Shown here piece after piece: positions 28,650 through 54,300 of a DNA stretch of 64,000 nt (positions within the stretch are counted from its first letter, which is position 1; every line of letters starts with the position of its first letter). Position numbers and translations under genes: made by a program. Source of the stretch: Macrostomum lignano. Lineage: Eukaryota. The stretch is taken from the NCBI GenBank assembly GCA_002269645.1, contig NIVC01000736.1, positions 124,001 to 188,000 on the forward strand. Reading direction: 5' to 3'. Under the pieces are notes generated by a model, which saw nothing but the letters and a program-made list of their open reading frames with translations, did not search any database and had not been told where the DNA came from.

Positions 28650-29275
28650 TACAGAATTACCACTCAGCCCCTACAGAATCGCCACTCAGCCCCTACAGAA
28701 TCGCCACTCAGCCCCTACAGAATCGCCACTCAGCCCCTACAGAATCGCCATTCAGCCCCTACAGAATCGCCACTCAGCCCCTACAGAATCGCCACTCAGC
28801 CCCTACAGAATCGCCACTCAGCCCCTACAGAATCGCCACTCAGCCCCTACAGAATCGCCAATCAGCCCCTACAGAATCGCCAATCAGCCCCTACAGAATC
28901 GCCACTCAGCCCCTACAGAATCGCCATTCAGCCCCCACAGAATCGCCACTCAGCCCCTACAGAATCGCCACTCAACCCCTACAGAATCGCCATTCAGCCC
29001 CTACAGAATCGCCAATCAGCCCCTACAGAATTACCACTCAGCCCCTACAGAATCGCCACTCAGCCCCTACAGAATCGCCATTCAGCCCCTACAGAATCGC
29101 CACTCAGCCCCTACAGAATCGCCACTCAGCCCCTACAGAATCGCCAATCAGCCCCTACAGAATCGCCACTCAGCCCCTACAGAATCGCCACTCAGCCCCT
29201 ACAGAATCGCCAATCAGCCCCTACAGAATCGCCACTCAGCCCCTACAGAATCGCCAATCAGCCCCTACAGAATCC
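28650..29275. repeat. 22-bp minisatellite (CAGCCCCTACAGAATCGCCACT), about 28 copies
   Basis: The tandem array ends about 40 nt upstream of the sorting-nexin ATG. Confidence 0.96.
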
Positions 29276-29314
29276 GGACGTTCTTGCAGTGCAACCTGCG
29301 GCAATGCGGATGCC

Positions 29315-32005: not shown

Positions 32006-32048
<43 letters not shown>

Positions 32049-35000: not shown

Positions 35001-35504
35001 AGTGACCCGTGGGATTAGTGGCCTGTCAGATTAGTGACCCGTGGGATTAGTGACCTGTGGGATTAGTGGCCTGTCAGATTAGTGACCCGTGGGATTAGTG
35101 ACCTGTGAGATGAGTGAACTTTGTAAAGAATTGGTGAATTCCGTGTAGATGCTAGCCATGCAGGTGAATCCGTGAACTCCTTTAATTCCAGGGCCGTCCA
35201 CCTGGGCAGCCGCCGGCTGCTCGCCCCTGAGCGGCTCCGGAGGCTGCTGGACTGGCTGATCCTGGCGACTCGCCAGCAGCAGCTCCATGCTGTCGCTGAC
35301 GAGCTCGAAGCCCCGCCTCAGCCGCCAAAGCCGCCGCCGCCGCCCAGGCTGCTCAGCTTGCTGTGCCGGTGGCAGCTCGGGCCGGACTGGACGGACCGAC
35401 TGGCCGATGAGGCTCGCCAAGTCCTCGGCTCCGAGTGCGACAACCGGCGACTCCTGGCAGCCTGCGGCTTCGAGTGCCTGCTGGCGCTGCGGCTGCTGGA
35501 GTGA
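29315..35504 (+). CDS. PXA-PX-Nexin_C sorting nexin (SNX13/14/19/25 group, SNX19-like as no RGS domain is seen); approximate exons 29315-29888, about 30201-30503, 30889-31132, 31213-31361, 31694-31954, 32166-32303, 32693-32836, 33774-33837, 34406-34592, 35192-35504
   Basis: Two N-terminal hydrophobic helices. PXA-like EILEACLASWLRPLS and LTHLLPPQEAACGPLRQLL. PX domain (IVIVGTEKV...YTLYIIK...VVKRRYKQFAGLYKDL...RIGLLTDFLQ|ALIATPEVCTSAELKAFL). Nexin_C-like end (DNRRLLAACGFECLL). The exon 2 acceptor is uncertain, as it needs a GAG acceptor or a missed exon. Confidence 0.78.
29893..30088. repeat. 17-bp intronic minisatellite (GATTATCGGGTTTATGG), degenerating 3'-ward
   Basis: Begins within the splice donor context (GTGAGATTATCGG). 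Confidence 0.9.
30508..30842. repeat. 38/41-bp intronic minisatellite (ATGAACTGCAGGCAGATGATGCAGCTGTGGCTGGGGCC)
   Basis: Tandem array directly after the donor at 30504. Confidence 0.93.
31410..31620. repeat. 44-bp intronic tandem repeat (GATTAGTGCAGCTGTACTCATCGATAAGTA[T/C]ACATTAGCACTTT), about 5 copies
   Basis: Seen directly. Confidence 0.92.
31985..32047. repeat. (TCTG)n microsatellite
   Basis: Seen directly, in an intron. Confidence 0.9.
32338..32665. repeat. 40-bp intronic minisatellite (TTCTGGGGCTTATTCCGGGTCAGTGAGGCTCTCACTGTGT), about 8 copies
   Basis: Tandem copies, each carrying a CAGTGAG-gct-CTCACTG stem-loop. Confidence 0.93.
33240..33720. repeat. 21-bp intronic minisatellite (GTAGATTTGGTAGAGTAGGCT), about 22 copies
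   Basis: Seen directly. Confidence 0.94.
33862..34388. repeat. 36-bp intronic minisatellite (TTGAAACATGTCTTGACCCAGCTCTCGACCCACTTC), about 14-15 copies
   Basis: Seen directly. The unit is three related 12-mers. Confidence 0.95.
34775..35107. repeat. 16-bp intronic minisatellite (GGATTAGTGACCTGT[C/G]), about 20 copies
   Basis: Seen directly. Confidence 0.93.
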
Positions 35505-38008: not shown

Positions 38009-39015
38009 GCTATCGCATAAACTCGCACTAAGAAGTGACACAAGGGCACACTGTCATATCTGGCAAGAGCATAAGTCACATGTATGACAAGCTGAGCTCA
38101 AGTGCCAGGTGACAAGTCCAAAATGCCAGTGCATCGCAAGCAAGCCTTCTCCATACAAATAAAGATATGGAGTTCAATTCAAAAGACTGTCGCCAGGCGC
38201 ACGAGCTCGCATATGGATGAGCTGGAATGAAAATCCGCACCATTCCACTTCTCTGGGCTGCTTGATTGAGTAGAGTAGCGGCCGCAATGGGGATGCATTG
38301 CAAACTGAAATATTACGCCAAATTAGAGTCTAAGAGGGCGCCAATACTAACTGGGGATTATGCAGAGTTTCTATCAATTCAGTCAGTTGGAAAAAACTGC
38401 CCTGCACAGTAAAGAAGTACATTTTTTCACAATGCGCTCAGGAGGCAGCGCGGGAAGGCGACTCCCGGGCCGCCCACATCGGCCACGCGGCTTCCCGCAG
38501 ACGGTCTCTGCTGCTGATTGCCCGGCCTCATCTGCGCCCATCCCCGCCTGAGCCGCAGCAACAGCTCCACCTTGATGTGCACGCGGCTTGTAGGCATCTC
38601 TGCATGCGGAGAGCCCAGCAGGTGAGTTGATGAGGCAGCGCAACGGCTTTCCCAGCTTGGGAAAGTTAACAGTCTCTGAGGTGGGGCCGATGACTTGAAA
38701 AGCTGCTGGTAGGGCGATTAAATTTCCTCCTGCCTGCCGGCGGCAAGCCCAACAGCTTCGCAGCTCCGCGCCACATGCAGCATGCGGAGCGGCGCCCGCC
38801 TTCCCCCATTTGGCAAATTTCGTTATTCATGACCAGCGCGGGACGTCGGAGGGGCTGAGGTGGCTGCAGTCTGAGCTGACAGCTTGGACAACAGCTGGTT
38901 GCTAGGGGTGATTGAGCTCAACAACGGGAGCAGTGATAAATTTTACTGCATGCAGGATTTCTGCCGACTGCCTCATCCCGAGCCCTCGCATCCGCAATAC
39001 CGCACTGCAGCCAGC

Positions 39016-40050
39016 ATGGCAACCAGCTTCATCGCTACTCCAGTCTCCGTTCTGCTTGCAGCGGCCTGCCTGGCCCAGCTGGTCCACTGCGAGAGACTGC
39101 CGAGCTCCTGGCACCGCCTGAGCAGCCCGCAGTGCCTGGCTGAGAATCTGGCAGTGCGAGCGACTCAGAATCTGAGAGGCATCAGCGAGTGCCTCATGAA
39201 GGCTGGCTCGAGCGGCCTGCAGGTGGCCCAGTTCGACTCGGACACTCGCCAGTGCTCGCTCTTCCAATACATCGCAGTGTGCCACCTCATCGAAGGACTC
39301 GCTGCTGCAGAGAGCTCGCAGCTCCGCCGCTGTGCCGCATTCGCCAATGCCAGAGCCGCCAAGTTCCTCACCTTGAGCAGGAAGCTCATGCTGGGTGTGG
39401 GCTCGAAGCTGAGGGCCGCCTGGGTGATGAGCGACGATGCGGACGCCAGCAGGAGCAACTTGGTGTGCGGCCAGACGCAGCAGTGGATTTTGGAGAATGT
39501 GGAGTGGAGCAGCGAGGGAGCCAAGCTCGACGGAGTGTCGTCCAAGATGTGGCTGGAGAACGTGGAGTTCGCGAGCGTGAAGCAGGGACTCACGTGGCTG
39601 CTCAGGCTCAAGCGGGAGAACACAGAAGCAGCGTTTCTGGAGACCTACGACTGCACCACTAACATCAGGGGAGCCGCTCTCTGGAACGGCTTGCCAAATG
39701 TAGCAGGCCTGTACTTCATCAGGTTACCTCAGGTCCCTTCCAGCTATTCTTCTTACAGAACCGCACCGGAAACGAACTCGTTTGACCCGAATTCGTTCGT
39801 GGAAGTCGGCCTGACGTCGGCGACTCTCTCCACCCAGAAAGTTTTCTCTAACGGAGGCTTCGTGCCGCCAGGGCAGGTGATTGCAGAAGTCACAAATCCT
39901 GCAACGAGCATTCCAAACTGCACCTGCATGTCACTGGGGTTTCTACTTGGCGACTCGCGAGTGCTGAACGGCACGGTGCAGGCGGTGGCCGTCATGAACG
40001 ACTCGATGACCGAGGCTGAGATCCGCAGCTTCTTCGATCTGGTGCGCTGA
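39016..40050 (+). CDS. Single-exon secreted protein of 344 aa: signal peptide, Cys-containing PAN/Apple-like module, C-terminal LamG/concanavalin-like beta-sandwich
   Basis: Long ORF (38884-40050) with exon-like GC content. The ATG at 39016 opens MATSFIATPVSVLLAAACLAQLVHC (signal-like). Cys spacing C..x..C...FDSDTRQCSL is PAN-like. The WSSEGAKLDGVSS...LTWLLRLK...VQAVAVMNDSMTEAEIRSFF pattern resembles the ends of LamG_3/pentraxin-like domains. Confidence 0.72.
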   Translation: MATSFIATPVSVLLAAACLAQLVHCERLPSSWHRLSSPQCLAENLAVRATQNLRGISECLMKAGSSGLQVAQFDSDTRQCSLFQYIAVCHLIEGLAAAESSQLRRCAAFANARAAKFLTLSRKLMLGVGSKLRAAWVMSDDADASRSNLVCGQTQQWILENVEWSSEGAKLDGVSSKMWLENVEFASVKQGLTWLLRLKRENTEAAFLETYDCTTNIRGAALWNGLPNVAGLYFIRLPQVPSSYSSYRTAPETNSFDPNSFVEVGLTSATLSTQKVFSNGGFVPPGQVIAEVTNPATSIPNCTCMSLGFLLGDSRVLNGTVQAVAVMNDSMTEAEIRSFFDLVR

Positions 40051-40087: not shown

Positions 40088-40470
40088 TGAAGGCTATGGA
40101 TAAATCCAAGTTGCTTTAATCCCAGTTGCTTTAATCCCAGTTGCTTTAATCCCAGTTGCTTTAATCCTAGTTGCTTTAATACCAGTTGCTTTAATCCCAG
40201 TTGCTTTAATCCCAGTTGCTTTAATCCCAGTTGCTTTAATCCAAGTTGCTTTAATCCAAATTGCTTTAATCTCAGTTGCTTTAATCCAAATTGCTTTAAT
40301 CGCAATTGCTTTAATCCCAGTTGCTTTAATCCCAGTTGCGTTAATCCCAGTTGCTTTAATCCCAGTTGCGTTAATCCCAGTTGCTTTAATCTCAGTTGCT
40401 TTAATCCCAGTTGCGTTAATCACAGTTGCTTTAATCCCAGTTGCTTTAATCTCAGTTGCTTTAATCCCAG
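40088..40470. repeat. 15-bp minisatellite (CCAGTTGCTTTAATC), about 25 copies
   Basis: Seen directly, just after the stop of the secreted-protein gene. Confidence 0.95.
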
Positions 40471-40555
40471 CTGCTCCACGTTGGCTTTATTGTTCACGTG
40501 CGGCTGTCTCGCCCTCTTTCCGCATATCGTGTGCTTTTCTTCCCTCTCGCTAGTA

Positions 40556-41293
40556 GGCAGTCAGTCAGTCAGTCAGTCAGTCAGTCAGTCAGTCAGTCAG
40601 TCAGTCAGTCAGTCAGTCAGTCAGTCAGTCAGTCAGTCAGTCAGTCAGTCAGTCAGTCAGTCAGTCAGTCAGTCAGTCAGTCAGTCAGTCAGTCAGTCAG
40701 TCAGTCAGTCAGTCAGTCAGTCAGTCAGTCAGTCAGTCAGTCAGTCAGTCAGTCAGTCAGTCAGTCAGTCAGTCAGTCAGTCAGTCAGTCAGTCAGTCAG
40801 TCAGTCAGTCAGTCAGTCAGTCAGTCAGTCAGTCAGTCAGTCAGTCAGTCAGTCAGTCAGTCAGTCAGTCAGTCAGTCAGTCAGTCAGTCAGTCAGTCAG
40901 TCAGTCAGTCAGTCAGTCAGTCAGTCAGTCAGTCAGTCAGTCAGTCAGTCAGTCAGTCAGTCAGTCAGTCAGTCAGTCAGTCAGTCAGTCAGTCAGTCAG
41001 TCAGTCAGTCAGTCAGTCAGTCAGTCAGTCAGTCAGTCAGTCAGTCAGTCAGTCAGTCAGTCAGTCAGTCAGTCAGTCAGTCAGTCAGTCAGTCAGTCAG
41101 GCACCCACTCACTCAAGTCAGTCAGTCAGTCAGTCAGTCAGTCAGTCAGTCAGTCAGTCAGTCAGTCAGGCACCCACTCACTCAAGTCAGTCAGTCAGTC
41201 AGTCAGTCAGTCAGTCAGTCAGTCAGTCAGTCAGTCAGTCAGTCAGTCAGTCAGTCAGTCAGTCAGTCAGTCAGTCAGTCAGTCAGTTAGTCA
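40556..41293. repeat. (TCAG)n microsatellite of about 730 bp with two identical GCACCCACTCACTCAA interruptions
   Basis: Seen directly. The SQSV ORFs are artefacts. Confidence 0.97.
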
Positions 41294-41866
41294 GGGAATA
41301 AAATTCGAGAGAAACTAACTGCAGTCTCAGTGCTGTATTTCGAACTGGATGGTCGAGTGAGTGAAGTGCGTAGTAGTGAAGAAAGTAGTAGTCTCTCGTT
41401 TTTATTTTTACGAAAAAATCTAAAATCTGGATATCAGAGGATGTAGCGATAAGTCTAGAGCTGATGATCAGTGAGTAAGCGGGGCCCTACATTCTGTCTA
41501 GCATGGCATAACATGGCATATTGGATACACTTTTCAACTGTTGCATTAACGCTTTTACATTACATAAACTCCCGTTAAAAAGATCAATTTTAAATCTAAT
41601 CGAGATTAATGAAGTATAACAAAAAGTACTTTTAGTGCGTTTTCTAATCGTACATCGCCTTGCACAGTTGCAACTAAAAACCTACGAGAACTTGAATAAG
41701 TGGCTAAGAGACGGGAAAAGTGGCCCAAAAGTTGAAAAGCCACAACGGCATGTCGTTAAACTGTTTGTTTTAAAAAGAGCAGAAAACTCCGCACTACTCA
41801 GGCCCGAAGGAACTCTTGATTCTTTCACCTGACGTCCTGCAGGTCTTTGTGCTGAACGTCTTTGTC

Positions 41867-44800
41867 TCAGGTGTCCTGGTTTTCAGCCAGGGCAGCCAGC
41901 TGCCGATGCGGGGGCAGCTGCCTGCTCGGTCCTGAACTGCTGTTGCTCATCTTCTGGACGAGCGTCTCCAGTTTCCGCAGGCGCTTCAGCTCCTTTTGAA
42001 TGTCCTTGATCTGCTCAAAGATTATCTTGTTGCCCTCGTCCAGATCTTCCTCGTCGATCACGACGCCTCGGAAGGTGGAGCGCTGGCCCCTGCAGCTGAT
42101 GGCCTGGTAGTACAAGTAGTAGAGGAACACCTCGACTTCGCTCTTCTCGGTGCTGCGCGGTGCCGTTCGCTTGCCGTCGCTACTCTTGTTTCGCCGGAAG
42201 CGCCTGATGATCCACGCGATGAGGCGGCGCAGCTCCAGCAGCACGTTGAACGGTGGCGGCAGCTTGGAGCGCATGAAGAACTCCTGGGTGAGGTCGTACT
42301 TCTCGAACTGCCACATGGCGGTTGACTCGCGATTCACGGCGTCAATTGTCTCACTAAACATCGCCACGATGACGTTGAGCAGAAGAATCTGGACTATCAC
42401 GATGTAGATGACCATGAAGATGTTAGTAACCAGCAGAGATCCTGTCTCGTGAACGCAGTCTTCTTTGGCATCCGGAGAACTGCAGAGATTCGTCTTGTCA
42501 TCCAGGCCGTACTCGCCGACGATCATAAAGAAGGTCGTTCTGAACATCCGCACAGCGATCTCCTGCGCCTCTGTGCCGTTGTCGGTATCCCCTGGGCTCA
42601 GAGATGATGTGCCAAAGTTGGTCGGTGGGTACAGCAGCGCCTGGAACACAACTCCGAAGCCGATCATCAGGATGAACAGGATATACAAGAATGGCAGGAA
42701 GTCCTTCTTCACCATGAGCGCCATCATCTTCAGCTTGGGGCCGAGGCTTTCCAAGATCACCGAAACGAATAGCAGTCGAATCCAGTACACCAGGCAGGTT
42801 GTTGACAGCAGCACCAGAGCCCAGTATCGAACACTCTCAGCATGCTCAGACTTTCCTGAAATTTCGTCATCCAGCCTCAACGCAAAGCTTATGATGCCAC
42901 AAAGTATAGCCGTCAGATCGATCAGGTTCCAGCCATCCGAGAAGTAGGAGGCGAGCGATTCGTCCTTTTTGCTCTTGAAGATCTCGTTAATTTCCTCCAC
43001 CAGAAAGCCCAGCAGACACACGTAGCAGATGCACTCCGACACACTCATCCTCTTGTTGAATAGGCGCATCACGACGAACGACAGAAGCAGAACAAACATC
43101 ACGTGCGCCGTCACGTGGAACCGAAATTTTACGCAGGGGATATCATAGAAGGCGTTTAACTCTTTGAATACTCGCCGCACATACGATGGCTTCTTGGGCG
43201 GCACTTCCGCTTCAGGTGGCTGCGGCAGGAGCCGCTCCTCTGCGCCTGTCATCTCGTGCCCGTGATGCTCGTTGTGGCTGTGCAACGCACTTTTCACCTG
43301 CACGAACTTGCTGTCCTGCAAGATCTCAGGATTCTTAAAGGTTGGCGACTCTTTACGGAAGCGTTCCATGATCAGCGGTAGGAGCAGCATGAGCGGCGGC
43401 ACGAAACCCATGAGAATGGCGCCCTCCATCTTCCAGACGTTGCTGCGGACGAAGAAGAAGTCGGAGTACCAGAACATGTCTAACGTGTCCTGTACCACAT
43501 CGATGGTGACGAAGCTGCTGGACTCGCCCCTGGCGGCCAGGTCGATGGCGTCGTAGTCACCGTAGGATCGGAGCGGAAGCCTCAGGTACTCCATGGTGAG
43601 AATGTTGTTCTGCGACGTGTCGAATTCCTTAATGCGTCGCAGAGCTTGAATAGCGATCCCCTCGCACGTGTTGGCCATATTTATTGCCTTGTTTCTATAA
43701 ACGTCCTCGATGCTTCGCAGGATGCTGAGGCAGCGAAGCAGTTTAGCCATGAGAAGCGCCTGTGGGATGAGATCGTACGGCTCTTGGCGCAGAAGGTGTG
43801 GCGTTAACTTAAACCGGCCTGTGAGCACGCTCCACATAGCCAGGGTACGGACTGGGTCCTTCATTACTTCTATCGGCGAGTCCAGGTTGCAACGATCCGT
43901 CTGTTCGTCAATGAAGTCGGTGTGCCTCAGCTGCCACAGTTTCGTGGTTTTGGACACTAGCATGTGCAGCTTGTCGTAGGAGACTCGTTGCGTCACTTCT
44001 TGCAAGCTTTCGCCGGAACCGAGGATTTTCGTTTGTTGCTTCTGGTCTTCGTCTTCGTCTTCATCATCTTCGTCTTTAAGGCACTCGCGCCAGACCAGGC
44101 CTCGGATCCCCACCCGCTTTGCAATAAGCGTCTTCTCGTACACCTCGACTATGTTACTTTCCAAGAATTGAACGATCTTGCCCCACAGAACTCCTAGATT
44201 CATGAGTTCCTGCAGCAAAATCTCATTCTCAGTTACGAGCACATGTCGAAAGATGCTCTCTGCTATCTTGGGCACCAGGTCCTTGGAGATGATTTCGTCT
44301 ACCAAGCCGTTGCTCACAGCACGGATTATGATCTGTACAAACTCGTTGATGTCGATTCGTTCGTCTGACTCAATATAGCTCAATAGCATTTCGTTGGTTG
44401 CTTCATCCAGCCGGTTTTGGAAGTACTCAATGTCTGTGTCCGTTGGGACGAAAGTGCGCCTGTACTCGTTGTCAATCTTGGTCAGAGTGTCTAAAAACTT
44501 TCTAGCTGAGTCCGTGCTGAAAACCGTGCGGAAACTTCCGGCTTCCGGACACTTGACTACCTTGTTCGCCAGCAGATACCCGTAGGTATCGAGGATTGCG
44601 TTGTCCTGGTTCATGATCACCAGATCAAGCGGCGTCCGTCCTTGCAAGTCTTTAACAGCAATGTCGGCTCCGTGCTCAACAAGTACGGCAAACAGTTCCG
44701 CGTTGCTGTTTGTGGCCGCGATGTGCAGCGGGGTGAGTCCGCGGTTGCCAATGACGTTGATGTGCTCAGAGTGTTCATGTAGGAGGACGCCCACCGTCTC

Positions 44801-45229
44801 CAGGTACTCCTCTAGGGAGGCCCGATGGATTGGCCAGTCGTTCAACCGATCCGGCGCATTGCATTTGGCTCCATGTGCGAGTAGTCGGCTGATGAACCTG
44901 GAGTCTTTGATTGCGGCCGCTTGGTGCAGGGTCGACTCCGTGTTCACAGTGGCAGTGTTAGGATCGGCTCCCAGCTCTAGTAGCAGCTCCACGGTCTCAA
45001 AGTGACGCTTCTCGAGGCCCAGGTTGAGAGCCGACTTGCCTGCGCTGTTTAAGGCGTTCAGATCGGCGCCGTGCTCCTTCAACAGACGGATCACCTCAAT
45101 TTTGTTGTCTGTCGCGGCCCGGTGCAGCAGCGTCCGGTCATTCTGACGACTGTCAACGTCCTCAGCTTTGTCATCAAGCAGCTGGCGAAGCTGCGTCACC
45201 GACGGGTAGGCGGACCACAGGCTGCTCAT
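41867..45229 (-). CDS. Intronless TRP cation channel of 1120 aa: 5-6 N-terminal ankyrin repeats plus TRPM-type MHR3/4, pre-S1, S1-S6, TRP box and coiled coil
   Basis: Ankyrin repeats (TLLHRAA...LLKEHGADLN, LTPLHIAA...LVEHGADIA, GRTPLDL). TRPM-like PVRTLAMWSVLTGRF, ALLMAKLLR and FYDIPCVKF. Also YFSDGWNLIDL, LGPKLKMMALMV, pore MIVGEY, LLLNVIVAMFSET, TRP box WQFEKYDL.QEF and LPPPFNVL. Confidence 0.93.
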   Translation of the reverse strand: MSSLWSAYPSVTQLRQLLDDKAEDVDSRQNDRTLLHRAATDNKIEVIRLLKEHGADLNALNSAGKSALNLGLEKRHFETVELLLELGADPNTATVNTESTLHQAAAIKDSRFISRLLAHGAKCNAPDRLNDWPIHRASLEEYLETVGVLLHEHSEHINVIGNRGLTPLHIAATNSNAELFAVLVEHGADIAVKDLQGRTPLDLVIMNQDNAILDTYGYLLANKVVKCPEAGSFRTVFSTDSARKFLDTLTKIDNEYRRTFVPTDTDIEYFQNRLDEATNEMLLSYIESDERIDINEFVQIIIRAVSNGLVDEIISKDLVPKIAESIFRHVLVTENEILLQELMNLGVLWGKIVQFLESNIVEVYEKTLIAKRVGIRGLVWRECLKDEDDEDEDEDQKQQTKILGSGESLQEVTQRVSYDKLHMLVSKTTKLWQLRHTDFIDEQTDRCNLDSPIEVMKDPVRTLAMWSVLTGRFKLTPHLLRQEPYDLIPQALLMAKLLRCLSILRSIEDVYRNKAINMANTCEGIAIQALRRIKEFDTSQNNILTMEYLRLPLRSYGDYDAIDLAARGESSSFVTIDVVQDTLDMFWYSDFFFVRSNVWKMEGAILMGFVPPLMLLLPLIMERFRKESPTFKNPEILQDSKFVQVKSALHSHNEHHGHEMTGAEERLLPQPPEAEVPPKKPSYVRRVFKELNAFYDIPCVKFRFHVTAHVMFVLLLSFVVMRLFNKRMSVSECICYVCLLGFLVEEINEIFKSKKDESLASYFSDGWNLIDLTAILCGIISFALRLDDEISGKSEHAESVRYWALVLLSTTCLVYWIRLLFVSVILESLGPKLKMMALMVKKDFLPFLYILFILMIGFGVVFQALLYPPTNFGTSSLSPGDTDNGTEAQEIAVRMFRTTFFMIVGEYGLDDKTNLCSSPDAKEDCVHETGSLLVTNIFMVIYIVIVQILLLNVIVAMFSETIDAVNRESTAMWQFEKYDLTQEFFMRSKLPPPFNVLLELRRLIAWIIRRFRRNKSSDGKRTAPRSTEKSEVEVFLYYLYYQAISCRGQRSTFRGVVIDEEDLDEGNKIIFEQIKDIQKELKRLRKLETLVQKMSNSSSGPSRQLPPHRQLAALAENQDT

Positions 45230-46440
45230 TCCGGCGGATTGCTCTCGTGGGATGCCGCTTAGAGTGCGCCGAGTTTCTTTCCGTTTAACCGGTTAATAAT
45301 TGTTTAAAACGTGCGGGCGGTGCTTCTGTGGTGTTCAAACTGTCTGGGTTGCGAACTGCCTCCTCTCACTGATGGCGCTCTCTAGCTTTTTAACAGAAAG
45401 GGGCTGCTCACAAGAAGCCAATTGATAGGGCCGGGCGCGGGCTCCAGAGGTTCAGACAATTTTTTTTGCTCGAGTGCGCCCGCTTTCTGCTGCGGCTCTG
45501 TGCTGGAGGCGCACTCGCTATGCTTTTCTCTTTTTGCTTTTCGTTGCTTCCGAAAGCCTTCAGTTTTCAGTCTGGGCAGCGAACTTGAAAGTAAAGCCCC
45601 AGTTGATGACTGTCTGTCGTGTTTTTTCGCTCCTTGTGTTCGGTGCGCTCGCGGCGGTTCGACTGCCCATTGCTGCTGAGATGACGCGTTCGATGAAAAA
45701 ATACAATGGAAGGAAGAATGAAGGCATTCTCTGCTGGCTGAAGAGGCCCTGTCCCGACCTGGCCTCACAACAGGCACAATGAGTCCGCCATTGTGCTGCA
45801 GCTCACTCAGTGTCTGTGGAGCTCGCACATTCGGGGGCACCTGCCTATCTCTAAAAGTAGGCTCAACCCACCGCGTTTTTACTAGCCTAGCTTGCTGTCT
45901 AAGAAATCTGAAGGCACGCATTGCCTCATAGCGTATTTGCACCCAGCACTGGTTAGTGAGATGATGGCCTGGCTTGCATGCTCTGACTCGGAGCAGAATT
46001 CTGCTCGGGCACGAATTCTCTAACCTCATATTATGAATAGCTTGCTCATTTGCAAAATATTGAATTGCAGTTTTTATCTCAAAACAGCTGATTGCAGTTC
46101 CTTCCGTCAGTCAATCAAGGTTTTATTGACTCGGCGAATGTTCGTTTTATTTTCACTTTTTTTCTCATTACAAAAGCACTAAAAAGGCTCGTCGCCCACG
46201 ATCTCGCTCGCTACGCGCTATTTGCTTACAAATCTGTTTCACAAATCGGTACTTATAACTTCATCTTAAGTAGCGTAATACACTGAGAAGTAGATCGTGT
46301 ATTTATTGGCGGAACACTCCAGTCAATTAGATTTTTTAAGACTTAAGGAGTAAAATTGAACTGTCTTATCAGCCTATATGTACGATTAGTCAATCAGTTT
46401 GCCCACGCGGCTCGGTGAAGCTTCTCAGCTTAAGCGCCAC

Positions 46441-47196
46441 TCAGTCGTCCATTTCGTCCCAGTCGGGCACCACAATGGGCTCCTCTCCGATCGTCATCTC
46501 TTCCATGCGACCTCCTGGACGACCTGGACGTCCGGGACGACCGGGACGACCACCAGGGCGTCCGGGACGACCTGGAGGTCCCATTGGCGGGCAGCCCTTC
46601 CTACGGGGTGCCTTGGCGAAGGCGCTAGCAGTTTCCGCCCTGGTCGCCGGCCCGCTGCTGTTTGTCCAGATCTCGATACGGTCGCCGTCTTGGATCCTCC
46701 AGACGTCATCGTCAGTCTGCAGCAGCTGCAGGTTGTTGCGCACAATCCGAGTGATGTTAGTGACGTTGCAGTGGCGCCCCAAAGCACTGGCGAAGTCCCT
46801 GTACAGGTTGTCGCCCATCATGTAGTTGAGCTCCTCCGGCACTTGGAAGGCCATACTCCTGTTAAATGCCGGTATATGTTGGGAAAATTGATTAATGTAT
46901 TGCATTCATGTTAACACGTACTCACTTTGCAACTACTGAAGGCGAACAAGCGCGAATCACCTGTAGTACGGAGTCGAGTCGTCCACCTTGCGCACAAGGA
47001 ACTGCACAGTCCGGGCGTAGCCACCATAAGTGACGTTGGTTGCATTCTTCACGGCGACGGTCGCGTTGGTGCTGAAGTTGGCGGACCGGCGGAACAGTCT
47101 GAAGCTGAACGCGGCAGCGGGCGCAGGCATCAAGACCGCCATCGCGAGGCCCAGGGCCAGGGCGCTCAGCGCCAGATTTGGCAGTGAAAATCGCAT
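46441..47196 (-). CDS. Two-exon secreted orphan glycoprotein of about 217 aa; exons 47196-46961 and 46858-46441
   Basis: Signal peptide MRFSLPNLALSALALGLAMAVLMPAPAAA. A phase-2 GT-AG intron (TACAG|GTGATT ... TTTAACAG|G) joins two open frames. Seven N-x-S/T sequons, a GPPGRPGRPGGRPGRPGRPGRPGG repeat and an acidic tail. Confidence 0.75.
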
Positions 47197-48399
47197 TTGA
47201 ATTCGTAGAGCGCTGGAAATTTCGAAGAGTAGAAATTCGACCAACTATGGGCAATCGGTCGCACTCCCAGCTGCTGCTAGGCCTGGTGGCTCGCCTTTTA
47301 TCTTGAATTTTTTTGAGAAAGTCGAAAGCAGCCCCGACTGCAGCGATAAGGCAGGCAGTGAAACAGCGGAAAACTGCAGCTCAAGCTCTGACAGTTTTGG
47401 AGACATTCCACCTGAAGCCAGCTCTGCACTCAGGCCTGGCTTATCAACCTGTCTTGGTTGCCAGAGCACGCAGTAGAAATTTATTCTTTCATTTTTGGCG
47501 ATTTCCTAATGAGACTTCAGAATATCAGGTGATATTTTGCTGCTAAGATAAGCAGATACCTTGACCGGGCCAGCTTTATCGCGAACTGCGGCCTCCCCAT
47601 GCAGCAAGCGGTTAAGGTGGCTCTTCGCATTACCTCGTGACGAATTAAATTTTTGAGACGAAAGTCGAGACGAGATTTGGCATTCTAACAAGAAATGTTT
47701 ACTAATACTTACGACGGTCTAAGCGTGTGACCTAAACAAGCTTTTTAAACAACTTGACCTTGGAGAGTCGGCACCTATAGCTCTACTTATGGGGTCGTGT
47801 GTGCAAGAAAGACTCCAGCTACTCCTGTGTAGGAGTGTAGCTTAGCTTAAAAAAAGTTCAGAATCCTCATCAGTGCTGAAGGCTCGTTCATGAGGAACGC
47901 CATCAAACAGCTTGCACGTACTTTTTATCGCCCGTGTGACTCGACACTGACAAGTATTGGTCGGCCAAATGGATCCCGGACCACGCTGGTTTCCTCGGCG
48001 ACGAGTGTGCTGACCTGCTGGCTCTGCCAGCGCGCTTCTGGAGCCAAGCCCAGGGGCCCCCATCCCCGCCTCGGTGGTCAAGTTCTGTACTGACTCTGAG
48101 CATCTCCGCAGATGGCACGACACTCGGAATTGCAGGCAGTCTTGTGCCTGCCCGTCCGCTGTCCCTCCCCCCTCCTGCGTAGAGATCTTGGAGCAGTCAG
48201 CATGGCCCTCTCCAGGCATGACTGCTCCTCTTGCCACCGTTTCGCGTCACAATAGTACTACAGCACAGATATGAATATGAGTATAGTATAAAGCATCAAC
48301 ATAATAACAAGTTATAAAGTCAGATTGTATACGTTTGTAACCATGGTTACCACGGACTTCCAGGCTGGTACTGCATGGTGTGCGTACATGCGTGCGGGT

Positions 48400-51300
48400 A
48401 AAATCGCCCCCTTCTCAAAAACCGACTCTCCTAGAGAATCGCCCCCTCTTCCTCATAAAAAACCGACTCTCCTGGAGAATCGCCCCCCTCTTCCTCAAGA
48501 AACCGACTCTCCTGGAGAATCGCCTGAATCTTCCTCAAAAAACCGACTCTCCTGGAGAATCGCCTGAATCTTCCTCAAGAAACCGACTCTCCTGGAGAAT
48601 CACCTGAATCTTCCTCAAAAACCGACTCTCCTGGAGAATCGCCTGAATCTTCCTCAAGAAACCGACTCTCCTGGAGAATCGCCCCCCTCTTCCTCAAGAA
48701 ACCGACTCTCCTGGAGAATCGCCTGAATCTTCCTCAAAAACCGACTCTCCTGGAGAATCGCCCCCCTCTTCCTCAAGAAACCGACTCTCCTGGAGAATCG
48801 CCCCCCTCTTCCTCAAGAAACCGACTCTCCTGGAGAATCGCCTGAATCTTCCTCAAGAAACCGACTCTCCTGGAGAATCGCCTGAATCTTCCTCAAGAAA
48901 CCGACTCTCCTGGAGAATCGCCTGAATCTTCCTCAAGAAACCGACTCTCCTGGAGAATCGCCTGAATCTTCCTCAAGAAACCGACTCTCCTGGAGAATCG
49001 CCTGAATCTTCCTCAAGAAACCGACTCTCCTGGAGAATCGCCCCCTCTTCCTCAAGAAACCGACTCTCCTGGAGAATCGCCTGAATCTTCCTCAAGAAAC
49101 CGACTCTCCTGGAGAATCGCCTGAATCTTCCTCAAGAAACCGACTCTCCTGGAGAATCGCCTGAATCTTCCTCAAAAACCGACTCTCCTGGAGAATCGCC
49201 TGAATCTTCCTCAAAAACCGACTCTCCTGGAGAATCGCCTGAATCTTCCTCAAGAAACCGACTCTCCTGGAGAATCGCCCCCTCTTCCTCAAGAAACCGA
49301 CTCTCCTGGAGAATCGCCTGAATCTTCCTCAAAAACCGACTCTCCTGGAGAATCGCCTGAATCTTCCTCAAGAAACCGACTCTCCTGGAGAATCGCCTGA
49401 ATCTTCCTCAAGAAACCGACTCTCCTGGAGAATCGCCTGAATCTTCCTCAAGAAACCGACTCTCCTGGAGAATCGCCTGAATCTTCCTCAAGAAACCGAC
49501 TCTCCTGGAGAATCGCCCCCCTCTTCCTCAAGAAACCGACTCTCCTGGAGAATCGCCTGAATCTTCCTCAAGAAACCGACTCTCCTGGAGAATCGCCTGA
49601 ATCTTCCTCAAAAACCGACTCTCCTGGAGAATCGCCCCCCTCTTCCTCAAGAAACCGACTCTCCTGGAGAATCGCCCCCCTCTTCCTCAAGAAACCGACT
49701 CTCCTGGAGAATCGCCTGAATCTTCCTCAAGAAACCGACTCTCCTGGAGAATCGCCTGAATCTTCCTCAAGAAACCGACTCTCCTGGAGAATCGCCTGAA
49801 TCTTCCTCAAGAAACCGACTCTCCTGGAGAATCGCCTGAATCTTCCTCAAGAAACCGACTCTCCTGGAGAATCGCCCCCTCTTCCTCAAGAAACCGACTC
49901 TCCTGGAGAATCGCCTGAATCTTCCTCAAGAAACCGACTCTCCTGGAGAATCGCCTGAATCTTCCTCAAGAAACCGACTCTCCTGGAGAATCGCCTCTTC
50001 CTCAAGAAACCGACTCTCCTGGAGAATCGCCTCTTCCTCAAGAAACCGACTCTCCTGGAGAATCGCCTGAATCTTCCTCAAGAAACCGACTCTCCTGGAG
50101 AATCGCCTGAATCTTCCTCAAGAAACCGACTCTCCTGGAGAATCGCCTGAATCTTCCTCAAGAAACCGACTCTCCTGGAGAATCGCCTGAATCTTCCTCA
50201 AGAAACCGACTCTCCTGGAGAATCGCCTGAATCTTCCTCAAGAAACCGACTCTCCTGGAGAATCGCCTGAATCTTCCTCAAGAAACCGACTCTCCTGGAG
50301 AATCGCCTGAATCTTCCTCAAGAAACCGACTCTCCTGGAGAATCGCCTGAATCTTCCTCAAGAAACCGACTCTCCTGGAGAATCGCCTGAATCTTCCTCA
50401 AGAAACCGACTCTCCTGGAGAATCGCCTGAATCTTCCTCAAGAAACCGACTCTCCTGGAGAATCGCCTGAATCTTCCTCAAAAACCGACTCTCCTGGAGA
50501 ATCGCCCTTCCTCAAGAAACCGACTCTCCTGGAGAATCGCCTCTTCCTCAAGAAACCGACTCTCCTGGAGAATCGCCTGAATCTTCCTCAAGAAACCGAC
50601 TCTCCTGGAGAATCGCCCCCCTCTTCCTCAAGAAACCGACTCTCCTGGAGAATCGCCTGAATCTTCCTCAAGAAACCGACTCTCCTGGAGAATCGCCTGA
50701 ATCTTCCTCAAGAAACCGACTCTCCTGGAGAATCGCCTCTTCCTCAAGAAACCGACTCTCCTGGAGAATCGCCCCCCTCTTCCTCAAGAAACCGACTCTC
50801 CTGGAGAATCGCCTGAATCTTCCTCAAGAAACCGACTCTCCTGGAGAATCGCCTGAATCTTCCTCAAGAAACCGACTCTCCTGGAGAATCGCCTGAATCT
50901 TCCTCAAGAAACCGACTCTCCTGGAGAATCGCCCCCCTCTTCCTCAAGAAACCGACTCTCCTGGAGAATCGCCTGAATCTTCCTCAAGAAACCGACTCTC
51001 CTGGAGAATCGCCCCCTCTTCCTCAAGAAACCGACTCTCCTGGAGAATCGCCTGAATCTTCCTCAAGAAACCGACTCTCCTGGAGAATCGCCCCCCTCTT
51101 CCTCAAGAAACCGACTCTCCTGGAGAATCGCCTGAATCTTCCTCAAGAAACCGACTCTCCTGGAGAATCGCCTGAATCTTCCTCAAGAAACCGACTCTCC
51201 TGGAGAATCGCCTGAATCTTCCTCAAGAAACCGACTCTCCTGGAGAATCGCCTGAATCTTCCTCAAGAAACCGACTCTCCTGGAGAATCGCCTGAATCTT

Positions 51301-54300
51301 CCTCAAGAAACCGACTCTCCTGGAGAATCGCCTCTTCCTCAAGAAACCGACTCTCCTGGAGAATCGCCCCCCTCTTCCTCAAGAAACCGACTCTCCTGGA
51401 GAATCGCCTGAATCTTCCTCAAGAAACCGACTCTCCTGGAGAATCGCCTGAATCTTCCTCAAGAAACCGACTCTCCTGGAGAATCGCCTGAATCTTCCTC
51501 AAGAAACCGACTCTCCTGGAGAATCGCCCCCCTCTTCCTCAAGAAACCGACTCTCCTGGAGAATCGCCTGAATCTTCCTCAAGAAACCGACTCTCCTGGA
51601 GAATCGCCTGAATCTTCCTCAAGAAACCGACTCTCCTGGAGAATCGCCTGAATCTTCCTCAAGAAACCGACTCTCCTGGAGAATCGCCCCCCTCTTCCTC
51701 AAGAAACCGACTCTCCTGGAGAATCGCCTGAATCTTCCTCAAGAAACCGACTCTCCTGGAGAATCGCCCCCCTCTTCCTCAAGAAACCGACTCTCCTGGA
51801 GAATCGCCTGAATCTTCCTCAAGAAACCGACTCTCCTGGAGAATCGCCTGAATCTTCCTCAAGAAACCGACTCTCCTGGAGAATCGCCTGAATCTTCCTC
51901 AAGAAACCGACTCTCCTGGAGAATCGCCTGAATCTTCCTCAAGAAACCGACTCTCCTGGAGAATCGCCTGAATCTTCCTCAAGAAACCGACTCTCCTGGA
52001 GAATCGCCTGAATCTTCCTCAAGAAACCGACTCTCCTGGAGAATCGCCCCCCTCTTCCTCAAGAAACCGACTCTCCTGGAGAATCGCCTGAATCTTCCTC
52101 AAGAAACCGACTCTCCTGGAGAATCGCCCTTCCTCAAGAAACCGACTCTCCTGGAGAATCGCCTGAATCTTCCTCAAGAAACCGACTCTCCTGGAGAATC
52201 GCCTGAATCTTCCTCAAGAAACCGACTCTCCTGGAGAATCGCCTGAATCTTCCTCAAGAAACCGACTCTCCTGGAGAATCGCCTGAATCTTCCTCAAGAA
52301 ACCGACTCTCCTGGAGAATCGCCTCTTCCTCAAGAAACCGACTCTCCTGGAGAATCGCCTGAATCTTCCTCAAGAAACCGACTCTCCTGGAGAATCGCCT
52401 CTTCCTCAAGAAACCGACTCTCCTGGAGAATCGCCTCTTCCTCAAGAAACCGACTCTCCTGGAGAATCGCCTGAATCTTCCTCAAGAAACCGACTCTCCT
52501 GGAGAATCGCCTGAATCTTCCTCAAAAACCGACTCTCCTGGAGAATCGCCTGAATCTTCCTCAAGAAACCGACTCTCCTGGAGAATCGCCCCCCTCTTCC
52601 TCAAGAAACCGACTCTCCTGGAGAATCGCCTGAATCTTCCTCAAGAAACCGACTCTCCTGGAGAATCGCCCCCTCTTCCTCAAGAAACCGACTCTCCTGG
52701 AGAATCGCCTGAATCTTCCTCAAAAACCGACTCTCCTGGAGAATCGCCCCCCTCTTCGTCAAGAAACCGACTCTCCTGGAGAATCGCCTGAATCTTCCTC
52801 AAGAAACCGACTCTCCTGGAGAATCGCCTGAATCTTCCTCAAAAACCGACTCTCCTGGAGAATCGCCTCTTCCTCAAGAAACCGACTCTCCTGGAGAATC
52901 GCCTCTTCCTCAAGAAACCGACTCTCCTGGAGAATCGCCTGAATCTTCCTCAAGAAACCGACTCTCCTGGAGAATCGCCTGAATCTTCCTCAAGAAACCG
53001 ACTCTCCTGGAGAATCGCCTGAATCTTCCTCAAGAAACCGACTCTCCTGGAGAATCGCCTGAATCTTCCTCAAGAAACCGACTCTCCTGGAGAATCGCCT
53101 GAATCTTCCTCAAGAAACCGACTCTCCTGGAGAATCGCCTGAATCTTCCTCAAGAAACCGACTCTCCTGGAGAATCGCCTGAATCTTCCTCAAGAAACCG
53201 ACTCTCCTGGAGAATCGCCTGAATCTTCCTCAAGAAACCGACTCTCCTGGAGAATCGCCTCTTCCTCAAGAAACCGACTCTCCTGGAGAATCGCCTGAAT
53301 CTTCCTCAAGAAACCGACTCTCCTGGAGAATCGCCCCCCTCTTCCTCAAGAAACCGACTCTCCTGGAGAATCGCCTGAATCTTCCTCAAGAAACCGACTC
53401 TCCTGGAGAATCGCCTGAATCTTCCTCAAGAAACCGACTCTCCTGGAGAATCGCCTGAATCTTCCTCAAGAAACCGACTCTCCTGGAGAATCGCCTGAAT
53501 CTTCCTCAAGAAACCGACTCTCCTGGAGAATCGCCCCCCTCTTCCTCAAGAAACCGACTCTCCTGGAGAATCGCCTGAATCTTCCTCAAGAAACCGACTC
53601 TCCTGGAGAATCGCCTGAATCTTCCTCAAGAAACCGACTCTCCTGGAGAATCGCCCCCCTCTTCCTCAAGAAACCGACTCTCCTGGAGAATCGCCTGAAT
53701 CTTCCTCAAGAAACCGACTCTCCTGGAGAATCGCCTCTTCCTCAAGAAACCGACTCTCCTGGAGAATCGCCTGAATCTTCCTCAAGAAACCGACTCTCCT
53801 GGAGAATCGCCCCCCTCTTCCTCAAGAAACCGACTCTCCTGGAGAATCGCCTGAATCTTCCTCAAGAAACCGACTCTCCTGGAGAATCGCCTGAATCTTC
53901 CTCAAGAAACCGACTCTCCTGGAGAATCGCCTGAATCTTCCTCAAGAAACCGACTCTCCTGGAGAATCGCCTGAATCTTCCTCAAGAAACCGACTCTCCT
54001 GGAGAATCGCCTGAATCTTCCTCAAGAAACCGACTCTCCTGGAGAATCGCCTGAATCTTCCTCAAGAAACCGACTCTCCTGGAGAATCGCCCCCCTCTTC
54101 CTCAAGAAACCGACTCTCCTGGAGAATCGCCTGAATCTTCCTCAAGAAACCGACTCTCCTGGAGAATCGCCCCCCTCTTCCTCAAGAAACCGACTCTCCT
54201 GGAGAATCGCCTGAATCTTCCTCAAGAAACCGACTCTCCTGGAGAATCGCCTGAATCTTCCTCAAGAAACCGACTCTCCTGGAGAATCGCCTGAATCTTC

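What the first reader, a model, noticed from the sequence alone, without database searches (positions are those of the whole stretch)
41867..45229. Ankyrin-repeat N-terminus fused to a TRPM-type channel body: a non-canonical TRP architecture
Seen: residues of about 20-205 form 5-6 ankyrin repeats, while the rest carries TRPM-specific hallmarks. These are the MHR3/4 motifs 'P.R.L..WSVL..R' and 'AL...KL.R', the 'FY..P.VKF' pre-S1, a pore Cys pair (NLCSSPDAKEDC), 'W.F.+Y.L..EF...LPPPF' and a C-terminal coiled coil. Established: canonical TRPM channels lack ankyrins and begin with the MHR1/2 (SLOG-like) domain, whereas ankyrins typify TRPA, TRPC, TRPV and TRPN. Inference: the MHR1/2 sensor region has been replaced by an ankyrin array. 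This could be an undescribed lineage-specific TRP subfamily with different gating or partners, and flatworm TRPM channels are drug targets.
Basis: partly seen in the sequence, partly recalled or inferred. Interest (0 to 1): 0.85.

Follow-up and report, generated by a model that had tools for sequence, protein, structure and literature searches.

The report
Flatworm ankyrin-TRPM channel, meclonazepam-target family
This is a real, intact gene of the free-living flatworm Macrostomum lignano for an ion channel that has ankyrin repeats in place of the usual TRPM N-terminal domain, but this odd architecture is already published as that of TRPM_MCLZ, the schistosome target of the drug meclonazepam, so the gene is a new member of a known family.

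Summary
Window 41867-45229 (-) is one uninterrupted 1120-codon ORF. It is identical to Macrostomum lignano PAA64338.1-type protein BOX15_Mlig022043g1. It encodes six ankyrin repeats (about res 14-225), an all-helical MHR3/4-like region, a TRPM-type six-helix transmembrane body, a TRP box (WQFEKY) and a long C-terminal helix. No SLOG/MHR1/2 domain is present.

The reading as an undescribed subfamily does not hold. The same architecture is published for Schistosoma mansoni TRPM_MCLZ (Smp_333650), the meclonazepam target. That channel was expressed and recorded in HEK293 cells, is called 'TRPM-like', and is reported in all parasitic flatworms.

In my trees the window protein sits in a Macrostomum-only group of at least 10 paralogue lineages (99-100% bootstrap). 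This group joins the fluke and tapeworm ankyrin-type channels (53% on S1-TRP alone, 100% with MHR4 added), and no SLOG-bearing TRPM falls inside. Five of the six published drug-pocket residues are identical.

A second genomic copy differs at 14 nucleotides, 13 of them synonymous, so the gene is under purifying selection.

Verdict: new member of a known kind. The Macrostomum expansion itself is absent from the papers I could search. Interest is low to moderate.

The parts
41867..45229 (-). Complete single-exon coding sequence, 1120 codons plus stop, of the ankyrin-TRPM-like channel (M. lignano BOX15_Mlig022043g1-type)
   Evidence: ORF list. Exact protein match. Called as one gene on NIVC01000736.1. 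In-frame stop at 45293-45295, 22 codons upstream of the ATG.
44555..45190 (-). Ankyrin repeat array, res 14-225: about six repeats plus an N-terminal cap
   Evidence: Pfam Ank_2/Ank_4/Ank/Ank_3/Ank_5, E 1e-18 to 4e-25. Ankyrin-1, DARPin and NOMPC ankyrin matches. AF2 helix pairs 34-52, 67-85, 100-118, 133-152, 167-185, 200-225.
43910..44554 (-). All-helical linker, MHR3-like, res 226-440. It includes an acidic low-complexity patch (DEDDEDEDEDQ).
   Evidence: AF2 models are helical only, with no beta strands, so there is no SLOG fold. The sub-model of res 205-690 matches only TRPM structures over 300-440 columns. Profile-profile sequence homology to the MHR3 of SLOG-bearing TRPMs is not significant.
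43355..43909 (-). MHR4-type TRPM homology region, res 441-625 (motifs PVRTLAMWSVLTGR, ALLMAKLLR)
   Evidence: Pfam PF25508 TRPM2-like over res 381-574, above the gathering score. The phmmer alignment to TRPM3/4/7/2 begins here.
43184..43354 (-). Poorly conserved, low-confidence linker before pre-S1, res 626-682
   Evidence: AF2 pLDDT below 50 over res 633-679. Identity to paralogues is 3-25%.
42752..43183 (-). Pre-S1 helix (FYDIPCVKF) and S1-S4 voltage-sensor-like domain, res 683-826. Pocket residues are H705, H709, F742, E746, R818 and F821. The TRPM-type Ca2+-site residues are E746, E749, N768 and D771.
   Evidence: Hydropathy and motif positions. AF2 helices. Column statistics against 105 other TRPMs.
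42356..42730 (-). S5, pore helix, selectivity filter V904-G905-E906, pore loop with Cys pair, and S6, res 834-958
   Evidence: Pfam Ion_trans over res 710-968. Alignment to TRPM3, where the filter is YGE. C925 (the C of 'EDC') is invariant in the family.
42191..42346 (-). TRP helix with TRP box WQFEKY and the LPPPF motif, res 962-1013
   Evidence: Alignment to TRPM3. W973 is invariant in the family and P991-P993 are invariant or nearly so. AF2 helices 962-986 and 995-1013.
41933..42037 (-). Long C-terminal helix, res 1065-1099, predicted tetramerisation coiled coil
   Evidence: AF2 helix 1065-1099. Weak match to the coiled-coil family SlyX over res 1060-1108, E 0.012. The coiled-coil role is inferred.

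Best explanation
The gene encodes a functional subunit of a tetrameric, Ca2+-permeable, non-selective cation channel. It belongs to the flatworm 'TRPM-like' ankyrin-TRPM lineage, whose characterised member is TRPM_MCLZ (Smp_333650), the meclonazepam target of Schistosoma mansoni.

In this lineage an N-terminal ankyrin array of about six repeats takes the place of the SLOG/MHR1/2 nucleotide-sensing module of ordinary TRPMs. The rest of the TRPM scaffold is retained: MHR3/4-like helical domain, S1-S4 ligand pocket, S5-S6 pore, TRP helix and C-terminal coiled coil.

The window gene is one of at least ten paralogue lineages in a Macrostomum-specific expansion that is co-orthologous to the single-copy parasite gene.

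Inferred mechanism:
- Gating goes through the S1-S4/TRP-helix cavity, which keeps 5 of the 6 residues reported to contact meclonazepam.
- Gating probably also uses the TRPM-type transmembrane Ca2+ site (E746, E749, N768, D771).
- A Gly-Glu filter (VGE) should pass divalent cations.
- The ankyrin array serves as the cytosolic partner-binding or assembly module instead of SLOG.
- F821 occupies the S4 position that decides meclonazepam sensitivity, as in drug-insensitive tapeworm channels. I therefore predict this paralogue is not meclonazepam-sensitive.

Shown here: the architecture, the clade membership, the residue conservation and the purifying selection. Inferred: ion selectivity, Ca2+ dependence, the role of the ankyrin array and the drug insensitivity.
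For: Architecture:
- Ank repeats, TRPM2-like MHR and Ion_trans are found; no SLOG is found.
- PDB sequence hits to the non-ankyrin part are all TRPM, E about 1e-33.
- The AF2 model is all-helical (pLDDT 73.9).
- Foldseek hits for the full model are TRPM2/3/4/5/7 plus NOMPC. For res 205-690 the top 50 hits are all TRPM.

Family:
- An exhaustive phmmer search against 1.84 billion representatives puts ankyrin-bearing, SLOG-less proteins at the top. These come from M. lignano, Opisthorchis, Dicrocoelium and Schistocephalus (188-760 bits).
- These score above every hit in which a SLOG domain was detected or expected; the best is the N-terminally truncated S. rodhaini protein P0022, 166 bits.

Trees (neighbour-joining):
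- The Macrostomum clade has 99% bootstrap support.
- Its union with the neodermatan ankyrin-type channels has 53% support on S1-TRP (295 columns) and 100% on MHR4 plus S1-TRP (433 columns).
- No SLOG-bearing protein falls inside.

Identification of the parasite proteins as TRPM_MCLZ orthologues:
- The Dicrocoelium protein reproduces the published S. mansoni pocket spacing exactly: H-x3-H-x32-Y-x3-E-x74-R-x2-Y, offset +18.
- The tapeworm protein has F at the S4 variant site, as published for Echinococcus.
- The Schistocephalus entry is named 'TRPM7', as Smp_333650 used to be.

Window residues: H705, H709, E746, R818 and Y978 are identical to the published pocket residues, and F742 replaces Y864. 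The S1 His pair is found in 10 of 11 Macrostomum and 7 of 9 neodermatan-type sequences, against N/Y in most of the 105 other TRPMs.

Selection: the second copy on NIVC01001761.1 differs at 14 of 3363 nt, 13 synonymous and one I44L.

Literature: TRPM_MCLZ has N-terminal ankyrin repeats, no SLOG and three exons, and is a recorded channel (PMC10788528, PMC11731825, PMC12861061).
Against: - The S. mansoni TRPM_MCLZ sequence itself was not in my data set. Its identification in other parasites rests on residue spacing and published descriptions.
- The trees are neighbour-joining on alignments guided by HMMs built from ankyrin-clade members. That can inflate within-clade similarity. Support for the union is only 53% on the transmembrane region alone.
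- No expression or electrophysiology data exist for this gene.
- The TRP box of the Macrostomum clade (WQFE[KR]x) resembles ordinary TRPMs more than the parasite form (WLA[DE]RY).
- The pore filter also differs: VGE in Macrostomum, F-E with no Gly in the parasites.
Confidence: 0.8

Rival explanations
1. The Macrostomum ankyrin-TRPM clade is an independent lineage. It either gained its ankyrin array separately from the parasite TRPM_MCLZ lineage (convergent domain replacement), or it is an ancient separate paralogue. On either view it would be a distinct, so far unnamed subfamily.
For: - The union with the neodermatan clade has only 53% bootstrap support on S1-TRP.
- The TRP box and pore filter differ between the two subclades.
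- Ankyrin identity between the subclades is only 23-30%, no more than between unrelated ankyrin arrays.
- ANK+SLOG TRPMs also exist in flatworms (P0029, P0130). Ankyrin arrays have therefore been attached to TRPMs in more than one context.
Against: - The union gets 100% bootstrap support when MHR4 is added.
- Parasite ankyrin-type proteins outscore every hit in which a SLOG domain was detected or expected in the exhaustive search.
- The two subclades share the S1 His-His and S4 R-x2-[YF] signatures and the same S1-S2 spacing.
- The region between the ankyrin array and MHR4 shares motifs across both subclades: VLFRED..LL against ILLND..ELL, with L339 invariant and W349 nearly invariant.
Confidence: 0.1
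2. The locus is an intronless retrocopy or decaying pseudogene that is not expressed as a channel.
For: - The gene is a single exon in a genome whose genes usually have introns. It lies in a very minisatellite-rich region.
- No expression data were available.
Against: - The 1120-codon ORF is intact, and all conserved TRPM residues are present.
- Two copies differ by 13 synonymous changes against 1 conservative replacement. If about a quarter of sites are synonymous, the binomial probability is about 1e-7.
- The characterised schistosome orthologue has only three exons, so being intron-poor is a family trait.
- Both copies keep the same neighbouring PX-domain gene.
Confidence: 0.04
3. The protein is really a TRPN/TRPA/TRPC/TRPV-type or TRPS channel, and the TRPM-like motifs are superficial.
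For: - N-terminal ankyrin repeats typify TRPA/C/N/V.
- NOMPC is the top Foldseek hit for the full model.
Against: - The NOMPC sequence match covers only res 56-207, the ankyrin array, and its TM-score is the lowest of the top hits (0.26).
- Without the ankyrin part, the top 60 PDB sequence hits and the top 50 structure hits are all TRPM.
- The TRPM-specific Pfam domain PF25508 passes its gathering score.
- TRPS is reported to carry SLOG and Nudix domains and no ankyrin repeats (PMC7306681). Neither domain is present here.
Confidence: 0.02
4. The ankyrin-channel fusion is an assembly or annotation artefact.
For: An older gene model (A0A1I8IA76, 2489 aa) wrongly merges this gene with neighbouring ORFs.
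Against: - The fusion needs no splicing: it is one continuous ORF in the raw window.
- It recurs on a second contig, in at least 10 paralogue lineages and in three parasite genera.
- It is also seen in a full-length Schistocephalus UniProt entry, A0A0V0J4K6 (transcript origin is from memory, untested).
Confidence: 0.01

Closest known systems
TRPM_MCLZ (Smp_333650) of Schistosoma mansoni and its orthologues in flukes, tapeworms and monogeneans ('TRPM-like' group; formerly filed as TRPM7-like)
   Same: - N-terminal ankyrin repeats, no SLOG/MHR1/2, TRPM-type MHR4, 6TM body, TRP helix and C-terminal helices.
- Very few exons.
- S1 His-His, S2 Glu, S4 Arg and TRP Tyr pocket residues with the same S1-S2 spacing.
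- The same clade in my trees (PMC10788528, PMC11731825, PMC12861061).
   Different: - Shorter: 1120 aa, against 1321-1413 aa for the full-length parasite proteins retrieved here, with a compact uninterrupted six-repeat ankyrin array.
- Y864 is replaced by F742.
- The S4 variant residue is F, the drug-insensitive type.
- The pore filter is VGE rather than the Gly-less F-E.
- The TRP box is WQFEKY rather than WLA[DE]RY.
- It belongs to a Macrostomum expansion of at least 10 lineages, whereas the parasites are reported to have a single gene.
- One exon, against three.
Canonical TRPM channels (TRPM1-8; structures of TRPM2/3/4/5/7/8)
   Same: - MHR4, pre-S1, S1-S6, a pore loop with a conserved Cys, the TRP box and LPPP motif, and a C-terminal helix. 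Sequence E is about 1e-33 and the fold matches.
- Ca2+-site residues E/E(Q)/N/D are conserved.
   Different: - There is no SLOG/MHR1/2 domain; an ankyrin array sits in its place.
- S1 has His-His where most TRPMs have N/Y.
Flatworm ANK+SLOG TRPMs (M. lignano PAA85706.1; Clonorchis KAG5447154.1, 'TRPM2')
   Same: A flatworm TRPM body with ankyrin repeats at the extreme N-terminus.
   Different: - They keep a full SLOG plus a complete TRPM2-like domain and are about 1700-1800 aa long.
- They fall outside the ankyrin-only clade.
TRPN/NOMPC and TRPA1
   Same: An N-terminal ankyrin array followed by a 6TM TRP channel.
   Different: The transmembrane and pre-S1 regions of the window protein are TRPM-type. 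The NOMPC similarity is confined to the ankyrin repeats.

Membership tests
Flatworm ankyrin-TRPM ('TRPM-like', TRPM_MCLZ type) | N-terminal ankyrin repeat array | tested here: met
   Pfam Ank families over res 14-205, E down to 4e-25. Six AF2 helix pairs.
Flatworm ankyrin-TRPM ('TRPM-like', TRPM_MCLZ type) | Absence of the SLOG/MHR1/2 domain | tested here: met
   No LSDAT_euk or LSDAT_prok hit at E<=1, although the same search finds SLOG in P0029 and P0130. The AF2 model has no beta strands before S1.
Flatworm ankyrin-TRPM ('TRPM-like', TRPM_MCLZ type) | TRPM-type MHR4, 6TM body and TRP helix | tested here: met
   PF25508 and Ion_trans. Aligned to TRPM3/7/4/2 from res 441 to 1021.
Flatworm ankyrin-TRPM ('TRPM-like', TRPM_MCLZ type) | Groups with TRPM_MCLZ orthologues rather than SLOG-bearing TRPMs | tested here: met
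   NJ bootstrap support is 53% on S1-TRP and 100% on MHR4 plus S1-TRP. Caveats: NJ only, alignment guided by a clade HMM, and Smp_333650 itself not in the set. The orthologues were identified by pocket spacing.
Flatworm ankyrin-TRPM ('TRPM-like', TRPM_MCLZ type) | Conserved VSLD pocket residues (Sm H827, H831, Y864, E868, R943, Y1117) | tested here: met
   The window has H705, H709, F742, E746, R818 and Y978. Five of six are identical and Y to F is conservative.
Flatworm ankyrin-TRPM ('TRPM-like', TRPM_MCLZ type) | Forms a cation channel activated by meclonazepam | not testable with these tools
   This needs heterologous expression. The S4 variant residue is F821, as in meclonazepam-insensitive tapeworm channels (PMC12861061), so insensitivity is predicted.
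Canonical TRPM | N-terminal MHR1/2 (SLOG) domain | tested here: not met
Canonical TRPM | MHR3 and MHR4 helical domains | tested here: inconclusive
   MHR4 is met. For res 226-440 the fold search matches TRPM over 300-440 columns, but profile-profile sequence comparison is not significant.
Canonical TRPM | TRP box WKFQRY-type and C-terminal coiled coil | tested here: met
   WQFEKY at residue 973. AF2 helix 1065-1099. The coiled-coil assembly itself is inferred.
TRPS (soromelastatin, ced-11-like) | SLOG and Nudix domains, no ankyrin repeats, divergent TRP box 2 | tested here: not met
   No SLOG and no Nudix domain; ankyrin repeats are present. The family description comes from PMC7306681. TRP box 2 was not compared because no TRPS sequence was on hand.
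TRPN/TRPA/TRPC/TRPV | Transmembrane region closest to these families | tested here: not met
   Without the ankyrin part, the top 60 PDB sequence hits and the top 50 fold hits are all TRPM. The NOMPC match is ankyrin-only.

The most novel reading that the evidence does not exclude
The free-living flatworm M. lignano has expanded the ankyrin-TRPM (TRPM_MCLZ-type) channel into at least 10 divergent paralogue lineages, each present in 2-3 near-identical genomic copies, whereas parasites are reported to keep one gene. On this reading the anthelmintic target derives from an ancient flatworm-specific sensory channel family whose S1-S4 pockets have diversified. The ANK+SLOG TRPMs of the same genomes would then be relics of a stepwise replacement: ankyrin added first, SLOG lost later. 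M. lignano is transgenic-tractable, so it could serve as a model for finding the natural ligands and the role of the ankyrin array.
Probability: 0.3. Interest if true: 0.5.

Novelty: new member of a known kind. Interest (0 to 1): 0.3.

Why it matters
TRPM_MCLZ-type channels are validated anthelmintic targets, but their natural activators and the role of the ankyrin array are unknown.

A conserved, selected set of paralogues in a free-living, genetically tractable flatworm does two things. It gives a comparative series for mapping which pocket residues set ligand specificity. It also shows that the ankyrin-for-SLOG swap predates the split between Macrostomorpha and the parasitic flatworms.

It does not reveal a new TRP family.

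Tried and rejected
- Word-indexed homologue searches largely failed. Two single-sequence queries and one 10-sequence alignment returned only the protein itself, two frameshifted old M. lignano models, or nothing. I therefore could not retrieve Smp_333650 or named planarian sequences. The exhaustive search supplied the family instead.
- A search of all fetched proteins for the exact S. mansoni residue numbering found none. P0022 (S. rodhaini) turned out to be a Nudix-bearing protein of the TRPM_PZQ type.
- No supplementary tables of the TRPM_MCLZ papers are held.
- hhalign of res 213-440 against the region upstream of MHR4 in SLOG-TRPMs gave no significant match (E 0.7). Sequence alone therefore does not prove that MHR3 is retained. 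The fold search supports it.
- Neighbouring ORFs at 38884-40050, 45382-46029, 46441-46905, 46957-47244 and 28598-30124 have no Pfam domains. I rejected them as parts of this gene. The 2489-aa merged model P0003 is an artefact.
- I considered and rejected the TRPN/TRPA reading suggested by the NOMPC top Foldseek hit. That match is driven by the ankyrin repeats.


Full report
**What is there**

Window 41867-45229 on the minus strand is a single uninterrupted ORF of 1120 codons. It begins at an ATG, and an in-frame stop lies 22 codons upstream.

The protein is an exact match to a Macrostomum lignano protein. Its cluster representative is PAA64338.1, BOX15_Mlig022043g1, which differs from it by one residue (I44L). 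The window comes from contig NIVC01000736.1 of assembly GCA_002269645.1, where the same single-exon gene is called.

The surrounding 64 kb is packed with minisatellites. This ORF is the only long clean reading frame.

**Checking the observation**

Pfam finds the following:
- the five ankyrin families over residues 14-205 (E 1e-18 to 4e-25);
- the TRPM-specific PF25508 'TRPM2-like' domain over res 381-574, above its gathering score;
- Ion_trans over res 710-968;
- no SLOG (LSDAT) domain, even at E<=1.

The same library does detect SLOG in other flatworm TRPMs. The negative result is therefore informative.

Against PDB sequences the ankyrin part matches ankyrin-1, DARPins and the NOMPC ankyrin array. 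The rest matches only TRPM channels: TRPM3/7/4/2/5/8 fill the top 60, at E about 1e-33. The alignment runs from MHR4 (res 441) to beyond the TRP helix.

An AlphaFold2 model built on a 14-sequence family alignment has pLDDT 73.9 and pTM 0.68. It is entirely helical. It shows six ankyrin helix pairs (res 34-225), six transmembrane helices, a TRP helix and a 35-residue C-terminal helix. No alpha/beta domain is present that could be a SLOG fold.

Foldseek on the whole model returns NOMPC and TRPM2/3/4/5/7. A separate model of residues 205-690 (pLDDT 70.9) returns only TRPM structures in its top 50, with alignments of 300-440 columns. That is more than MHR4 alone can account for, so an MHR3/4-like helical domain is retained. 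Profile-profile sequence comparison could not confirm MHR3 homology. I mark that step as supported by fold only.

So is the inference that the ankyrin array stands where MHR1/2 normally is.

**Relatives**

The word-indexed protein search was nearly useless here. The exhaustive phmmer search with residues 211-1040 found 1543 relatives.

The best hits are M. lignano paralogues at 34-52% identity. Next come proteins from Opisthorchis, Dicrocoelium dendriticum and Schistocephalus solidus, plus some unnamed entries from SRA assemblies (Logan) and UniParc (MetaClust). All of these that are full length carry N-terminal ankyrin repeats and lack SLOG.

They outscore every SLOG-bearing TRPM: 188-760 bits, against at most 166 bits.

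At the 50% identity level there are ten M. lignano clusters of this type. Most contain two or three near-identical genomic copies.

**Literature**

Himmel et al. 2020 state that ankyrin repeats are absent from TRPM and TRPS (PMC7306681). Their phylum list, as far as the passage shows it, and a search of the text give no mention of Platyhelminthes.

The schistosome literature, however, already describes this architecture:
- Sm.TRPM_MCLZ (Smp_333650) is the target of the anthelmintic meclonazepam. [quoted passage not shown]
- It 'lacks the NH2-terminal MHR1/2 or SLOG domain' (PMC11731825).
[quoted passage not shown] - It was earlier filed as TRPM7-like, which is the name the Schistocephalus UniProt entry carries.

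None of these papers mentions Macrostomum or free-living flatworms in connection with this channel.

**Is the window gene of that family?**

I could not obtain the S. mansoni sequence. I therefore identified the orthologues by the published pocket residues: H827, H831, Y864, E868, R943, H946 and Y1117.
- The Dicrocoelium protein has H845, H849, Y882, E886, R961 and Y964. That is exactly the same spacing, at an offset of +18.
- The tapeworm protein has F at the S4 variant site, as published for Echinococcus.
- The window protein has H705, H709, F742, E746, R818, F821 and Y978. The S1-S2 spacing is the same.

The S1 His pair and the Y/F three residues after the S4 arginine are characteristic of both subclades. 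They are rare among the 105 other TRPMs in the alignment.

Neighbour-joining trees with 200 bootstraps gave these results:

| Grouping | S1-TRP, 295 columns, 127 taxa | MHR4 + S1-TRP, 433 columns, 102 taxa |
|---|---|---|
| Macrostomum ankyrin clade | 99% | 100% |
| Neodermatan/unnamed ankyrin clade | 74% | not reported |
| Union of the two | 53% | 100% |

No protein in which a SLOG domain was detected falls inside the union in either tree.

Caveats:
- The method is NJ only.
- The alignments were guided by HMMs made from clade members.

I conclude with about 80% confidence that the gene is a Macrostomum co-orthologue of TRPM_MCLZ.

**Is it functional?**

A second copy on contig NIVC01001761.1 is also intronless and has the same PX-domain neighbour. 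It differs at 14 of 3363 nucleotides. Thirteen changes are synonymous and one gives I44L. If about a quarter of sites are synonymous, a 13:1 split has a probability of about 1e-7. The ORF is therefore under purifying selection.

Conserved functional residues are intact:
- the TRPM transmembrane Ca2+-site positions (E746, E749, N768, D771);
- the pore filter V904-G905-E906, which aligns with YGE of TRPM3;
- the invariant pore-loop Cys;
- the S6 LLLN motif;
- TRP-box W973.

**Mechanism**

The architecture and the conservation are shown. The rest is inferred. I expect a tetrameric, Ca2+-permeable, non-selective cation channel. It would be gated through the S1-S4/TRP cavity and probably modulated by Ca2+. 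The ankyrin array would replace the SLOG module as the cytosolic interaction or assembly domain. The C-terminal helix would form the TRPM-type coiled coil. F821 predicts insensitivity to meclonazepam.

**Rivals**

- Independent origin of the Macrostomum clade: about 0.1.
- Silent retrocopy: about 0.04.
- Another TRP family: about 0.02.
- Artefact: about 0.01.

Each is set out with its evidence in the Rival explanations section.

**Verdict**

This is a new, free-living-flatworm member of a named and functionally characterised kind. It belongs to a lineage-specific expansion that I did not find described in the papers held here. Interest is about 0.3.

Noticed in passing
window 48414-64000: A 40-bp satellite (consensus CTCAAGAAACCGACTCTCCTGGAGAATCGCCTGAATCTTC) runs for about 392 copies at 96% match. 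It has a constant GC skew of about -0.31 to -0.35 and runs off the end of the window.
   Followed up: no
window 10400-41300: About 30 separate minisatellite arrays with periods of 12-74 bp, many of them over 1 kb long. A (CAGT)n array of 184 copies lies at 40558-41294 and a 15-bp repeat at 40103-40475, both just 3' of the channel gene. These repeats create many spurious long ORFs.
   Followed up: partly
proteins P0029 (M. lignano PAA85706.1, 1781 aa) and P0130 (Clonorchis sinensis KAG5447154.1, 1708 aa): A second non-canonical flatworm TRPM architecture: ankyrin repeats N-terminal to a full SLOG, TRPM2-like domain and Ion_trans. In the trees these proteins fall outside the ankyrin-only clade. 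They could be an intermediate in the domain replacement or an independent ankyrin gain.
   Followed up: partly
L002 10001-13363 (NIVC01001761.1) against window 41867-45229: A near-identical second copy of the gene lies on another contig with the same PX-domain neighbour. It has 14 nucleotide differences, 13 of them synonymous. It may be a homeologue or an allele of the duplicated M. lignano genome.
   Followed up: yes
window 11748-13007 (+): This ORF encodes Myb/SANT plus SWIRM-associated regions 1 and 3. It is an exon block of a SMARCC (BAF155/170)-type chromatin remodeller subunit.
   Followed up: no
window about 31867-35504 (+); L001 19726-23363: An annotated PX-domain gene (785 aa product) lies downstream of the channel gene and is conserved next to both copies.
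   Followed up: no
window 46441-46905 (-) and 46957-47244 (-): Two ORFs without Pfam domains lie upstream of the channel gene. One has a Gly-Pro-Arg-rich low-complexity stretch. An old 2489-aa gene model (A0A1I8IA76) fused them to the channel. This looks like a mis-merge.
   Followed up: partly
window 41401-41406 (-): An AATAAA motif lies about 460 nt downstream of the stop codon. It is a candidate polyadenylation signal and has not been verified.
   Followed up: no
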